Below, piece by piece: positions 47,628 through 51,455 of a stretch of DNA of 64,000 nt. The translations under genes were made by a program, and so were the position numbers. Positions within the stretch are counted from its first letter, which is position 1, and each line of letters begins with the position of its first letter. The DNA comes from Podarcis muralis (Eukaryota): the NCBI RefSeq assembly GCF_964188315.1, contig NC_135656.1, positions 106,702,001-106,766,000 on the forward strand. Direction: 5' to 3'. A model generated the notes under the pieces. The model worked only from the letters and a program-made list of their open reading frames with translations. It made no database searches and had not been told where the DNA came from.

Positions 47628-50600
47628 TGTTATAGTTCAGAATTTATCTGGTTAAATTCCCTGGTGTGTGTCACCTGCTGACGTCAGCTTACAGCTGGGC
47701 GGAGACAGAAGCTTTAGAAGCTGGGCGGGACTATTCCCTGTTTGTTCAGTTCCCCCTGTGACTCTGAGGGGAGAAGGATGTTCCCTCTGTGTATCTGAGA
47801 GGGAGACATGTTTGCAGCAATGGCTGCCAGCAGTGACGGACTTTGATGCTGAAATGTTGTAATAAAGAGCTGTAAATAGACGAACCTGTCTATGTGTGCT
47901 TACAAGGAATAAGACTGCTTTACACGCTGTGTTTCTACTCTGCTAAAAGCCGTGACTGAGAAGAGACAGAAGGAGGAAGCGTGCCGGACCGCTGTAAGTG
48001 ATTGATTGGGAACGTAAAGCTGTCTGAAGTCGCGGCTCTATCGATCAAGGGCCAGATCGATATATCCGAACAGGTTATGGGAGGTCAGCCAACGCTCGTA
48101 AAGCAGTCGGTGTGAGCTCCAGGAATGTTTTTGAAGTCAGCGGTCTGCGGCTGAGGAGCGGAACGGGAGCTGTGTGGATGCCGGAGAGCAGGAATGATTA
48201 ATTGCCTGCTTCCGAGAGACAGTGAGAGCTTCTGATACACAGAGAGCTGGAAACTGAGACGCAGCCGATAATCGTTACTCCAAGCAAGGGAGAGCCGTAG
48301 GAGCTGGTACTGAGCACTGAGTACGCAGTAAGTACAGCTTGGGGCCCCTTGGGAGAACGGGAGAAGATGGCAGAGAGCCAGGATATACCAGTGGAAAAGC
48401 TCACTCTAAAGAGTTGGGCAACCTGGAGGCAAAGAATAAAGGGGTGGTTCCTGGTCCATGGGCTTTGGGCAGCAAGCCAGAGGGAGCCACTACCACCAAC
48501 CCCCAGCGCTAAAGCGGCTGGACACGTTGCAGGCTGTGATGCTGCGTTGCCGGAAGATAGCCAGCAGAAAATGCAAAGAGAGCTGGAGATGCTCAAGGCA
48601 TGTGTTGATGCTTCACTGAGACCCCACCTAGAGGGTGTGAAATCAGCGTGGGCGGCCTGGAATTTACTGAAAGGCCTGTGTCAAGCTTCACCGGGAGGCC
48701 AGAGCCCTGCAGACGCTGGACTAGAAGCCCCTATTCCCCAATCAGCCTCAAGGAGCGCTGGTGCGCAGATCAGGGGGGGCAGGAGTTCCAAAGGCAAGTT
48801 TGAAAAACTTTCCACTTGTGCTGAAGCGGAGAGCAGCTTCAGGGGGGGCGAGGCTGGTGGGAGGCGCCGTTCCAGAAGGAGGTGGGCCAAGCCAGCTGGG
48901 AGCCCCGGGCAGTGTTTTTCCACTGGAGTTCGTCGATGCTACGTGTGCAATTCGGCGCAACATCTGAGTGGCAGTTGCCCCCACCGGTGCAGAGAGCCGC
49001 GGCAGGATGTTGTGAAGGACATTTCCCATGGGAATCAGGCGGGTTTCCATGGCAACAGGCCTGGGAAGACAGGCAGGCGTGGAACTGAGCCAGGTGGCCG
49101 TGGTAAACAGCAGGGAGAAGAGTCTTATCAAGTCTCAGCGAGTATGGCAGTGTTTGAAGATGGCCGAGTGGAAAATTCCGAGATGGCCTTTGTAATAGAC
49201 TCTGCAGCTAACCGCAACATGGTTCCAGAGACCCCTGCAGTCGAGAGGTGGAATTGCACGGCAGTTCCGAAGGGACAGACTATTAAGTTTGCAAATGGAC
49301 AGAAAACTAGAGTTTCCAAGTGTACTAATGCCTATCTTTCTGTTTTACAGGAGACGGTGGATTTTTGTATTGTTCCAGAGATTCAACAATGTTTGTTATC
49401 TGTGCCTTATTTGTTAAGTAAGGGGTTCAAAGTTTGTTTTGAAAATGATGTCTGCACAATCTCCAAAGGGGGGAGGTTACTGGCCGAAGTGCGGAAGGGA
49501 CAGAATGATCTTTTCATTCTTAAAACGTCTCTTGGAGGTGAGGGGAAGGTTGAGAAAGCACAAGCGTTGCGTGCTACAGTTCCCAACCAGCGTGCTACAA
49601 TTCCCGCTCATAATGTTACATGTGCATGCGTATGGCATCAGAGAACGATTCACAATCCTTTAGAGGATTTGCAGGTGTTACCTGAGGTTGTTACAGGTTG
49701 TAAGATTAAAAATTGTCAAAGTGCCATTAATTGTGACACTTGCAAGCAGGCAAAGGTGAGAGGGTGCAGTTACCCAAAGGTGGAACGTGTAGCCACTAAA
49801 CCTTTTGAGCTGGTTCACATAGATTTGTCCGGTCCTGTCAAGGCACCAAGTCTAGGGGGGGCCAGGTTTCTGCTAACTTTTCTGGATGATTTCTCGCAGA
49901 ATTCCTGGGCTCACGGTCTCAAATCCAGGGAGGATGCAGCACAGCTGATCAAGAGCTGGATTGAGGGGGTGGAACAGAGGTTCTCCACCAGGGTTCAAGC
50001 TATCATCAGTGACAGAAATGCTAAGTACACTGGTTCTGCTTTGCAGAAGTTCTTTCAACAGAAAGGGATACGACACACAGTTATTTCACCCCAGCAAGGG
50101 GGGGTGGCAGAGCTGAGAAGTGGAGCTCTGGTTAAGGCTGCACAGGTGATGCTGAAAGAAGCCAGGTTACCTCCTGAGTTTTGGCTGGAGGCTACGAGGG
50201 CTGTGTCATTCACCTGGAATCGTGTCTACAACTCATTGGTAGGTGACACACCGTTCTCTTTGTTAAATGGCCGAAAACCCCAGGTTCACTTTCTGCGGAC
50301 GTTTGGGACTCCTGCGCTTGTCTCTGTGCCTGAGGCTTTGCGAGGGCCAGATGGAGCCAAAGTCCAGAAAATGATCTTCTGTGGGTATGAGCCAGAAGCC
50401 CGTGCATGGCGATTTGCTTACCCGTCAGGTGATCAGAGTAAGGTGCTGATCAGTAAACACGCTGAGTTCTTAGAGGAGGAGGTGAAATCAAAGACTCCTG
50501 TTAGGCGTGATGTTCTCTCAGATTGTCTCTCTGATCCAGAAGACAGTTCTGATGAGGCAGAGGAAGAAGGGGCTGAGGCTGCTGATGACGACCAGGTCAT

Positions 50601-51455
50601 TGACCAGGGTCAGGAGCAGGATGTGGCATCTCCACAAGTTGTTAAGAAACAGCCCAAGAGTGCGCCTAGTTCTCCTGTGAGTGTGATGGAGAGGATTCAA
50701 AGACGCTTTAAGTCAGAAGGAGAATCCCATGATGCAGAGGACACACCTGCTGATCAAAGTGAGTCAGAGGGAACACCTGAGTTTGTGCCTAGGAGGTCCA
50801 GTCGCACAACAAAGGGTATCCCACCAGAGAGGTATCAGGCCACAGGTGCGTGGGTAAGTTTCGCACAGTGCGATTCTGAAAGTTGTGAGGTGGTTCCACA
50901 AATGCCAAACAGGTTTGCCAAGGGAAGGCGCAAGGCATTGGGGAAGGAATTGATCTCACAAGGTATTACTGAAGATGTTGCACAGGTATCACGCAGGGAC
51001 ACAAGGGGGGTGTTATAGTTCAGAATTTATCTGGTTAAATTCCCTGGTGTGTGTCACCTGCTGACGTCAGCTTACAGCTGGGCGGAGACAGAAGCTTTAG
51101 AAGCTGGGCGGGACTATTCCCTGTTTGTTCAGTTCCCCCTGTGACTCTGAGGGGAGAAGGATGTTCCCTCTGTGTATCTGAGAGGGAGACATGTTTGCAG
51201 CAATGGCTGCCAGCAGTGACGGACTTTGATGCTGAAATGTTGTAATAAAGAGCTGTAAATAGACGAACCTGTCTATGTGTGCTTACAAGGAATAAGACTG
51301 CTTTACACGCTGTGTTTCTACTCTGCTAAAAGCCGTGACTGAGAAGAGACAGAAGGAGGAAGCGTGCCGGACCGCTGTAAGTGATTGATTGGGAACGTAA
51401 AGCTGTCTGAAGTCGCGGCTCTATCGATCAAGGGCCAGATCGATATATCCGAACA
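47628..51455 (+). mobile_element. Copia-superfamily LTR retrotransposon, RT/RNase H-less, 3828 bp, TSD ACCAT
   Basis: LTRs 47628-48072 and 51011-51455 (TG..CA, 445 bp, no difference seen by eye); TSD at 47623-47627 and 51456-51460; PBS-like GGTTATGGG; G-rich PPT. Confidence 0.95.
48367..51018 (+). CDS. Copia-type gag-protease-integrase polyprotein with no RT or RNase H
   Basis: Zn knuckle CYVCNSAQHLSGSC; protease FVIDSAANRNM..ANG..VP..CLLSV; HHCC (WHQRTIH..CDTC); integrase LVHIDLSGP, SDR, PQQGGVAE; SH3-like IFCGY; RRSSRTTKGIPPERY; first ATG at 48367. Confidence 0.9.
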   Translation: MAESQDIPVEKLTLKSWATWRQRIKGWFLVHGLWAASQREPLPPTPSAKAAGHVAGCDAALPEDSQQKMQRELEMLKACVDASLRPHLEGVKSAWAAWNLLKGLCQASPGGQSPADAGLEAPIPQSASRSAGAQIRGGRSSKGKFEKLSTCAEAESSFRGGEAGGRRRSRRRWAKPAGSPGQCFSTGVRRCYVCNSAQHLSGSCPHRCREPRQDVVKDISHGNQAGFHGNRPGKTGRRGTEPGGRGKQQGEESYQVSASMAVFEDGRVENSEMAFVIDSAANRNMVPETPAVERWNCTAVPKGQTIKFANGQKTRVSKCTNAYLSVLQETVDFCIVPEIQQCLLSVPYLLSKGFKVCFENDVCTISKGGRLLAEVRKGQNDLFILKTSLGGEGKVEKAQALRATVPNQRATIPAHNVTCACVWHQRTIHNPLEDLQVLPEVVTGCKIKNCQSAINCDTCKQAKVRGCSYPKVERVATKPFELVHIDLSGPVKAPSLGGARFLLTFLDDFSQNSWAHGLKSREDAAQLIKSWIEGVEQRFSTRVQAIISDRNAKYTGSALQKFFQQKGIRHTVISPQQGGVAELRSGALVKAAQVMLKEARLPPEFWLEATRAVSFTWNRVYNSLVGDTPFSLLNGRKPQVHFLRTFGTPALVSVPEALRGPDGAKVQKMIFCGYEPEARAWRFAYPSGDQSKVLISKHAEFLEEEVKSKTPVRRDVLSDCLSDPEDSSDEAEEEGAEAADDDQVIDQGQEQDVASPQVVKKQPKSAPSSPVSVMERIQRRFKSEGESHDAEDTPADQSESEGTPEFVPRRSSRTTKGIPPERYQATGAWVSFAQCDSESCEVVPQMPNRFAKGRRKALGKELISQGITEDVAQVSRRDTRGVL

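What the first reader, a model, noticed from the sequence alone, without database searches (positions are those of the whole stretch)
47628..51455. Very young Copia element that keeps an open gag-protease-integrase ORF but has no reverse transcriptase or RNase H
Seen: two 445-bp LTRs with no difference by eye, a perfect ACCAT TSD and an 883-codon ORF from the first ATG, with no stop or frameshift. The domain order PR then IN is Copia-type. After the RRSSRTTKGIPPERY linker, only a decayed echo of the pre-RT motif remains (EVVPQ..KALGKELIS vs EP..EA..W..AM..E..SL), and the frame then runs into the PPT. Established: Copia pol is PR-IN-RT-RH; non-autonomous LTR families are described mainly in plants and rodents; Copia is scarce in amniotes. 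Inference: this copy was reverse-transcribed recently in trans, and the heavily drifted yet open ORF implies a long-lived RT-less lineage under selection. It may supply its own Gag/IN while parasitising a helper's RT, which would be a possibly undescribed helper-parasite pair in lizards.
Basis: partly seen in the sequence, partly recalled or inferred. Interest (0 to 1): 0.8.

Follow-up and report, generated by a model that had tools for sequence, protein, structure and literature searches.

The report
Lizard jumping gene lacking its copier
This is a freshly inserted wall-lizard Copia retrotransposon from a multi-copy lineage that has lost the enzyme for copying RNA into DNA, so it must borrow that enzyme from a complete relative, while selection still preserves its own remaining protein.

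Summary
Window 47628-51455 is a 3,828-bp Copia element with two identical 445-bp LTRs, an ACCAT target duplication and one open 883-codon frame. The frame carries a gag remnant, zinc knuckle, protease-like domain and integrase, but no RT or RNase H.

The window is Podarcis muralis chromosome OZ076955.1.

- **Not a one-off deletion or assembly error.** A second element on another chromosome (L003) has the same RT-less junction, identical LTRs and an open 954-codon frame.
- **Multi-copy.** Contigs from independent resequenced animals bridge the junction at about 10-27 times single-copy depth.
- **Not fixed.** Two animals carry the empty site, so this insertion is polymorphic.
- **Under selection.** dN/dS between the two copies is 0.24-0.34 (p = 1e-3 to 6e-7).
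- **Far from any RT-bearing Copia.** Protease and integrase are only about 27-50% identical to the nearest ones and sit on a branch 2-3 times longer. The integrase DDE triad is kept, but many near-invariant neighbours and the protease DSG motif (now DSA) have changed.
- **Helper candidate.** L003's capsid is 94% identical to an autonomous P. lilfordi Copia (P0179). This mosaic points to co-packaging with that lineage.
- **Gag.** This copy's own capsid is eroded, so "supplies its own Gag" is doubtful here.

The scan has already flagged RT-less Copia copies elsewhere in this genome. I rate it a new variant of a known kind.

The parts
47623..47627 (+). 5' target-site duplication ACCAT
   Evidence: Direct reading. 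Repeated at 51456-51460.
47628..48072 (+). 5' LTR, 445 bp, TGTT...AACA. Carries a TGACGTCA site (47679), two GGGCGG boxes (47697, 47723) and AATAAA (47861).
   Evidence: 100% identical to the 3' LTR. Motif positions.
48073..48090 (+). Primer-binding site. The core GGTTATGG(G) is shared with L003 and with three autonomous lizard Copia lineages.
   Evidence: The half-tRNA primer of Drosophila copia is described in PMC5371799. The match to the tRNA-iMet anticodon loop is from memory and was not tested.
48367..51018 (+). Single open reading frame of 883 codons, ending at a TAG inside the 3' LTR
   Evidence: dN/dS against L003 is 0.24-0.34.
48367..48696 (+). Diverged N-terminal gag remnant (aa 1-110). 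It is followed to about 48933 by a low-complexity stretch where relatives have the rest of the capsid.
   Evidence: 26% identity to P0022 gag 3-113, E 1e-6. No Retrotran_gag_2 hit. No frameshifted capsid remnants.
48937..48978 (+). CCHC zinc knuckle (C-X2-C-X4-H-X4-C)
   Evidence: Direct reading. The homologous knuckle in L003 gives a weak, sub-threshold zf-CCHC hit (19.9 bits against a cut-off of 20.8).
49192..49428 (+). Protease-like beta-barrel. The active-site motif reads D-S-A (49198-49206) instead of D-S-G.
   Evidence: Pol_BBD weak hit. Alignment and conservation counts.
49636..49743 (+). Integrase zinc-binding H-X4-H ... C-X2-C motif
49795..50094 (+). Integrase catalytic core (rve). 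D486 and D549 lie inside it, and E582 lies just beyond at 50110-50112. Near-invariant neighbours are changed.
   Evidence: Pfam rve 43.4 bits. Conservation. Alignment to Ty1 and PFV integrases.
50269..50484 (+). Integrase SH3-like C-terminal domain
   Evidence: Pfam SH3_retrovirus 49 bits.
50515..50958 (+). Acidic linker and the pre-RT motif (RRSSR..PPERY ... KALGKELIS). This is the last stretch homologous to autonomous Copia.
50959..51010 (+). RT/RNase H deletion junction, 17-codon tail and purine tract (AAGGGGGG at 51003-51010)
   Evidence: Same junction in L003. Bridged by contigs of X1, X9 and X15.
51011..51455 (+). 3' LTR
51456..51460 (+). 3' target-site duplication ACCAT

Best explanation
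The element belongs to a multi-copy, currently mobile Ty1/Copia lineage of Podarcis muralis that has lost RT and RNase H. It keeps the cis signals needed for retrotransposition: LTRs, a half-tRNA-type PBS and a purine tract. Its RNA must therefore be reverse-transcribed by RT/RNase H supplied in trans inside particles of an autonomous Copia. The best candidate helper is the lineage represented by P0179 of P. lilfordi. Selection maintains the remaining frame (gag remnant, zinc knuckle, protease-like domain, integrase), so the protein matters for the lineage's spread. The most likely role is an integrase-containing polyprotein that rides in helper particles and serves the element's own, different LTR ends. 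Shown: the anatomy, the shared junction, multi-copy status, insertion polymorphism, purifying selection, and a mosaic capsid in the sister subfamily. Inferred: trans-complementation, the identity of the helper, and what the protein does.
For: Identical LTRs and a clean TSD. No RT or RNase H in the ORF or anywhere in the window. L003 in the same genome is 3,927 bp with 426-bp identical LTRs, TSD ACAGT and a 954-codon open frame with the same junction. In X1 and X9, element contigs have depth 365-569 and 140-183, against 20.9 and 14.8 for the single-copy flank. They differ from this copy by 0-2 nt per 300-435 nt in the protease-integrase region. Junction depth (487 in X1, 134 in X15) matches integrase depth (441-569 and 128). 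Empty-site joints occur in X1 (47621 to 51455, skipping 3,833 nt, which is the element plus the TSD) and in X9. dN/dS against L003 is 0.24 for protease-integrase (p = 0.0013) and 0.34 over residues 173-864 (p = 6e-7). Variants in population contigs are rich in synonymous changes (15 synonymous to 15 non-synonymous). The nearest RT-bearing proteins among 1.84 billion representatives are 36-38% identical. The RT-less pair groups with three lizard autonomous lineages (SH-aLRT 97) on a stem of 1.37 against 0.43-0.64. L003 gag residues 1-210 are 94% identical to autonomous P0179 (dS 0.42, omega 0.09), while the rest is 27-48% identical with saturated dS. The break falls sharply at residues 205-215. 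The PBS core GGTTATGG is common to all five lineages. There is low, 5:1 sense-biased RNA-seq coverage in X23. Thirteen small, probably transcriptomic runs from four studies hold 53-67% of the ORF words.
Against: No autonomous partner was shown in P. muralis itself. P0179 comes from P. lilfordi, and that copy is itself truncated at its 3' end. LTRs share no detectable similarity with those of the three autonomous lineages beyond the PBS and a few terminal bases. The capsid exchange is not recent (dS 0.42). The protease motif is DSA. Sixteen of 58 near-invariant Copia protease-integrase positions are changed, against 7-9 in autonomous lizard lineages. These include the position aligned with PFV integrase N224, so catalysis by the retained enzymes is uncertain. 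dN/dS rests on two full copies plus contig variants. Depth ratios from collapsed contigs are only a rough guide to copy number. The RNA status of most holder runs is a guess.
Confidence: 0.8

Rival explanations
1. RT was lost only recently from an unsampled autonomous lineage. On this view the long divergence of protease and integrase happened while the lineage was still autonomous. The open frame and low dN/dS would be a legacy of that past plus youth, and the protein would now be dispensable.
For: Protease-integrase dS between the two sampled RT-less copies is only 0.03-0.04, so the crown group is shallow (tree tip lengths 0-0.02). TE ORFs are largely missing from the P. muralis gene annotation, so the protein searches could miss an autonomous parent.
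Against: The two subfamilies share the junction yet differ by 22-29% in their LTRs, by dS 0.41 in the NC-linker and by dS 0.17 in the C-terminal tail. Differences accumulated since their split are significantly biased towards synonymous changes. Excess loss of near-invariant residues fits a changed constraint regime. Junction depth equals integrase depth in DNA and in RNA-like contigs, so no near-identical RT-bearing copies exist in those animals.
Confidence: 0.12
2. The retained polyprotein serves regulation rather than transposition chemistry. It might interfere with or modulate helper particles, as truncated Gag does in yeast Ty1 copy-number control. Alternatively it may be on the way to host co-option.
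For: Purifying selection coexists with DSA in the protease and altered residues around the integrase active site.
Against: The gene sits in polymorphic, multi-copy elements with intact LTRs, not at a fixed single locus. The DDE triad and the HHCC motif are retained. Selection at element level explains the pattern more simply.
Confidence: 0.05
3. A single autonomous copy suffered a deletion after insertion, or the RT was dropped by the assembler.
For: None beyond the missing RT itself.
Against: L003 on another chromosome has the same junction. Contigs from three independent runs bridge the junction. No relative above 50% identity carrying RT was found.
Confidence: 0.01

Closest known systems
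RLG_Quinta / RLG_Cereba and RLG_Sabrina, RLG_WHAM / RLG_Wilma pairs of wheat (PMC11302176, PMC9744471)
   Same: These are long-lived non-autonomous LTR lineages that keep part of the coding capacity ('semi-autonomous'). They are active alongside an autonomous partner, share its PBS and recombine with it.
   Different: Those are plant Ty3/Gypsy elements that keep only GAG and lack integrase, and their LTR termini match the partner's. Here a vertebrate Copia keeps protease-like and integrase domains, the capsid in this copy is eroded, and the LTRs are unlike any candidate partner's.
TR-GAG and GAG/PROT-retaining non-autonomous families of plants (PMC13570524)
   Same: LTR elements with identical LTRs and TSDs that encode only a subset of the polyprotein.
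   Different: TR-GAG elements encode only Gag. In sugar beet, families retaining other POL domains have them only partly decayed. Here a complete integrase frame is kept under purifying selection.
BARE-2 of barley and Tos17 of rice (PMC3977881; BARE-2 as cited in PMC13570524)
   Same: Copia elements that are mobile although they lack one essential function, and so depend on a relative.
   Different: Those elements lack Gag and keep RT. This lineage is the reverse case: it lacks RT and RNase H.
Autonomous lizard Copia lineages P0179 (P. lilfordi), P0022 and P0030
   Same: Same clade (SH-aLRT 97), same domain order up to the RT boundary, same PBS core and the same single-ORF layout.
   Different: They carry RVT_2. 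Their protease and integrase are 27-50% identical to this one, and their LTRs are unrelated at nucleotide level.
Mouse ETn/MusD and deleted IAP elements (from memory, not checked here)
   Same: Vertebrate non-autonomous LTR elements mobilised in trans by coding-competent relatives, and polymorphic between individuals.
   Different: Those are retrovirus-like (class II ERV) elements. ETn is non-coding and closely shares LTRs with its helper.

Membership tests
Ty1/Copia LTR retrotransposon | Direct LTRs ending TG...CA, flanked by a 5-bp target duplication | tested here: met
Ty1/Copia LTR retrotransposon | Protease before integrase, and integrase upstream of RT | tested here: met
   The order gag, protease, integrase, pre-RT motif is colinear with P0022, P0030 and P0179.
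Ty1/Copia LTR retrotransposon | Phylogenetic placement of integrase within Copia | tested here: met
   Clade with lizard Copia, SH-aLRT 97. The best solved relative is Ty1 integrase.
Ty1/Copia LTR retrotransposon (autonomous) | Encodes RT (RVT_2) and RNase H | tested here: not met
Non-autonomous LTR retrotransposon with an autonomous partner (criteria of PMC9744471) | The whole population lacks an essential coding domain | tested here: met
   Two full copies share the junction, and junction depth equals integrase depth in DNA contigs.
Non-autonomous LTR retrotransposon with an autonomous partner (criteria of PMC9744471) | PBS similar to the partner's | tested here: met
   The core GGTTATGG is shared. 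Downstream bases differ.
Non-autonomous LTR retrotransposon with an autonomous partner (criteria of PMC9744471) | LTR termini conserved with the partner's | tested here: inconclusive
   The 5' TGTTA is shared with the P0022 type. The 3' ends differ (GAACA here, against CAAAACA, CTCCAAA and CTCTTA). No other LTR similarity was found. The element has its own integrase, so this criterion may not apply.
Non-autonomous LTR retrotransposon with an autonomous partner (criteria of PMC9744471) | Partner active in the same genome at the same time | not testable with these tools
   The autonomous relatives found come from P. lilfordi, Logan contigs and an ENA assembly. Other scan notes of intact Copia in this genome were not checked.
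TR-GAG | Encodes Gag only | tested here: not met
   Integrase and protease-like domains are present, and the capsid domain is not detectable.
LARD / TRIM | No coding capacity | tested here: not met
   An 883-codon frame under purifying selection.

The most novel reading that the evidence does not exclude
Wall lizards host a stable division of labour among Copia elements. An autonomous helper supplies RT/RNase H and capsid. An old RT-less lineage keeps and uses its own integrase, which has a remodelled active-site surround that co-evolves with its own distinct LTR ends, and it occasionally swaps capsid modules with the helper. An integrase-encoding parasite of another element's RT has not, to my knowledge and in the literature I could search, been described for LTR retrotransposons.
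Probability: 0.3. Interest if true: 0.75.

Novelty: new variant of a known kind. Interest (0 to 1): 0.58.

Why it matters
Non-autonomous LTR elements that keep part of their coding capacity are known mainly from plants, where the retained part is usually Gag. This is a vertebrate Copia lineage that dropped RT and RNase H but keeps an integrase-bearing frame under selection. It is still inserting, as the polymorphic insertion in P. muralis shows.

Two questions become testable as a result. One is which retrotransposon functions must be supplied in cis and which can be borrowed. The other is whether owning an integrase frees a parasite's LTR ends from matching its helper's. It also provides polymorphic markers in a well-studied lizard.

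Tried and rejected
- **No other copy in the window.** A self-BLAST of the 64-kb window finds no other copy or solo LTR.
- **Protein searches with this ORF found few relatives.** Word-indexed searches with the protease-integrase part and with the C-terminal 324 aa found only P0001 (38% identity) and P0029. TE ORFs are largely unannotated in this genome, so these searches cannot count copies.
- **No frameshifted capsid.** tblastn of L003 and P0022 capsids against this element found no capsid remnants in other frames.
- **The 3' edge of the deletion could not be mapped.** The last 60 nt before the LTR align to the P0022-type 3' end no better than 73 of 500 shuffles.
- **No LTR similarity to autonomous lineages.** A sensitive BLAST found none.
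- **No partner 3' LTR in L006.** That P. lilfordi copy lacks most of its 3' LTR.
- **No tRNA or RNA family hits.** The window has no tRNA gene to test PBS complementarity, and Rfam gives no hits on the element.
- **The search of earlier findings by sequence with P0179 was blank,** which means nothing.
- **Literature searches found no description** of an RT-less gag-PR-IN Copia in lizards.
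Full report
**What is there**

Window 47628-51455 is a 3,828-bp LTR element.
- The two 445-bp LTRs are identical at every position.
- They start TGTT and end AACA, and are flanked by a perfect ACCAT duplication.
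- GGTTATGGG follows the 5' LTR directly.
- A purine tract ending in six G precedes the 3' LTR.
- One frame runs from the first ATG at 48367 to a TAG at 51016-51018, eight bases into the 3' LTR. It has 883 codons.
- Pfam recognises an integrase core, the SH3-like integrase C-terminal domain and, weakly, the Pol beta-barrel of the protease. It finds no RVT_2, no RNase H and no Copia gag domain.
- A CCHC knuckle is readable at 48937-48978.
- tblastn with the RT-RNase H part of a lizard Copia finds nothing anywhere in the window.
- The window holds no other copy.

**Where the homology stops**

The ORF aligns colinearly with an autonomous 1,385-aa lizard Copia (P0022) up to ORF residue 864, which is P0022 residue 902. 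P0022's RVT_2 domain starts at 908. Nineteen codons later the frame reaches the purine tract. The loss therefore covers essentially all of RT and RNase H. I could not map its 3' edge, because the remaining tail aligns to a Copia 3' end no better than shuffled sequence.

**Source**

The neighbouring olfactory-receptor protein and 16.9 kb around it are identical to Podarcis muralis GCA_964188315.1, chromosome OZ076955.1.

**A lineage, not an accident**

A search of 1.84 billion representative proteins found one close hit, P0029. This is a 315-aa P. muralis protein, 94% identical over the region that spans the junction. Its locus (L003, another chromosome of the same assembly) holds a 3,927-bp element with these features:
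- 426-bp identical LTRs and a TSD of ACAGT.
- An open 954-codon frame.
- The same junction, differing only by a 3-nt indel and two extra G in the purine run.

Its internal part from the zinc-knuckle region onward is 91.6% identical to this element. Its LTRs are only 71-78% identical, and its gag is unrelated at nucleotide level.

Laying Logan contigs of two resequenced animals from different studies (X1, X9) gave further support:
- Element contigs have depth 365-569 and 140-183, against 20.9 and 14.8 for the single-copy flank.
- They differ from this copy by 0-2 nt per 300-435 nt in the protease-integrase region.
- Contigs bridge the junction at about the same depth as the integrase (487 against 441-569 in X1).

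The family therefore has roughly 10-25 near-identical copies. This is a rough figure, because depths of collapsed contigs are not a copy count. Essentially all copies with this integrase lack RT. Other first-stage notes of this scan describe further RT-less Copia copies elsewhere in this genome. I did not check them.

**Youth and polymorphism**

- In X1 a 929-nt contig joins 47621 to 51455. It skips 3,833 nt, which is the element plus one TSD copy, at the depth of the flank.
- In X9 a contig joins 47627 to the downstream flank, with an additional indel of about 88 bp.

The empty site therefore exists in two other animals, and this insertion is not fixed.

**Selection**

Both copies share the RT loss, so every difference between them arose afterwards.

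| Region compared with L003 | dS | dN | omega | p |
|---|---|---|---|---|
| Protease-integrase (460 codons) | 0.039 | 0.0095 | 0.24 | 0.0013 |
| Residues 173-864 | – | – | 0.34 | 6e-7 |

Divergence is uneven along the frame: dS is 0.41 in the NC-linker, 0.03-0.04 in protease-integrase and 0.17 in the C-terminal tail. That pattern indicates recombination among sublineages. Variants carried by the population contigs are also rich in synonymous changes, including in this copy's unusual gag remnant (9 synonymous to 7 non-synonymous).

**Relation to complete elements**

The nearest RT-bearing relatives found with this ORF are 36-38% identical. In a tree of the protease-integrase region, the RT-less pair groups with three lizard autonomous lineages (P0179, P0030, P0022; SH-aLRT 97). 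Its stem is 1.37 substitutions per site, against 0.43-0.64 for theirs.

Of 58 positions that are at least 85% conserved in 110 Copia sequences, this protein has changed 16. The autonomous lizard lineages have changed 7-9 each. The changes include:
- the protease motif D-S-G, now D-S-A;
- two residues of the D-x-G-x-E motif beside the second catalytic aspartate;
- four residues of the N-G-x-x-E-R-x-N-R motif around the catalytic glutamate.

The HHCC motif and the D, D, E triad are intact. Alignment to solved Ty1 and PFV integrases confirms the register. It also puts a serine where PFV has N224, a residue that from my own knowledge lies at the active site. The protein has been kept open and constrained, but under a changed regime.

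**A mosaic that points to the helper**

A search with the L003 capsid found P0179, a 1,376-aa P. lilfordi Copia with RVT_2.
- L003 residues 1-210 are 94% identical to it (nucleotides 90%, dS 0.42, omega 0.09).
- Identity falls to 27-48%, with saturated dS, from residue 211 on.
- The break is sharp at residues 205-215. Nucleotide similarity starts nine bases before the ATG.

Such a patch is what template switching between co-packaged RNAs produces. This mechanism is established for retroelements and is discussed for the wheat pairs in PMC11302176. The RT-less lineage and the P0179-type lineage have therefore shared particles at some time. That makes the P0179 type the best helper candidate.

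All five lineages share the PBS core GGTTATGG. This is the position-type used by Drosophila copia, which primes with a half-tRNA (PMC5371799). The LTRs are otherwise unrelated. That would be tolerable if the element uses its own integrase.

**This copy's gag**

Residues 2-110 are a distant gag N-terminus, 26% identical to P0022. After that point the gag region does not align with that of relatives, is partly low-complexity, and is roughly 50-60 residues shorter than the corresponding stretch of P0022. No frameshifted remnants exist. This short-gag form is the majority form in X1, where its contig has depth 371. It probably cannot build particles.

**Expression**

- Stranded RNA-seq reads of X23 cover the ORF thinly, with a 5:1 bias. 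That is the sense direction if the library is of the usual kind.
- Contigs of X15 cover 47722-51134, including the junction, but none of the single-copy 3' flank.
- Thirteen small, probably transcriptomic runs from four studies hold 53-67% of the ORF words.

Reads cannot be assigned to this copy, and the RNA status of most runs is a guess.

**Reading**

The element is a young member of an RT/RNase H-less, semi-autonomous Copia lineage mobilised in trans. Its cis signals are complete. Its protein is selected, and its most likely use is as an integrase-bearing polyprotein acting on its own LTR ends inside helper particles. The last step is inference, and the altered protease and integrase surroundings leave a non-catalytic or regulatory role open.

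The kind is known from plants (PMC9744471, PMC11302176, PMC13570524), and the reverse, gag-less case from Tos17 (PMC3977881). A vertebrate Copia that keeps integrase but not RT did not turn up in four literature searches.

Noticed in passing
window 47971 (and the same LTR position in the 3' LTR): All contigs of X1, X9 and X15 that cover this LTR position carry 19 extra bases here. This copy therefore has a private 19-nt deletion, present in both of its LTRs (U5 part), which must predate or accompany its reverse transcription.
   Followed up: no
window 47975-47990; L003 7720-7735: The U5 part of both RT-less LTRs holds a 16-nt sense motif about 97-99 nt before the LTR end. It resembles, from memory, part of the 5' half of initiator tRNA-Met. 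A hit of this quality occurs in 1.35% of shuffled LTRs. The three autonomous LTRs have only looser versions. Other notes of this scan treat this motif.
   Followed up: partly
L004 (ENA assembly contig, protein P0030): This otherwise complete-looking Copia frame jumps from the middle of RVT_2 (Pfam positions 3-109 of 244) to the RNase H linker. It lacks the stretch that holds YVDD in P0022, so it is another RT-defective Copia with an open frame.
   Followed up: partly
L006 7080-7131 (P. lilfordi OX395127.1): The annotated 1,376-aa P0179 gene reads into the last approximately 20 nt of an LTR. This copy has lost the RNase H C-terminus, the purine tract and nearly all of its 3' LTR.
   Followed up: partly
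window 48373-48380: Contigs of X15 match the 5' UTR and the first codons and then diverge into other gag starts. One reads like a normal Copia capsid N-terminus that matches neither this copy nor L003. More gag types therefore share this 5' region in P. muralis.
   Followed up: no
window 48244-48327: In X1 and X15 a contig replaces these 82 nt of the 5' UTR by 90 other letters. Eighteen RNA reads of X23 also diverge upstream of 48328, so the expressed copies mostly carry a different 5' UTR segment.
   Followed up: no
window 46936-47610: The 5' flank is a very high-copy repeat (summed contig depth 1e4 to 1e6). It includes a minus-strand ORF that looks like the C-terminal end of a LINE reverse transcriptase. 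The Copia element inserted next to it.
   Followed up: no
window 51770-52702 (-): An intact 310-aa olfactory-receptor gene (7tm_4). The polymorphic Copia insertion lies 315 bp beyond its stop codon. X9 also lacks about 88 bp at 51469-51556.
   Followed up: no
run X34 (organism B): One run of another organism holds 11% of the ORF's sampled words, so a close relative of the family may exist in a second species.
   Followed up: no
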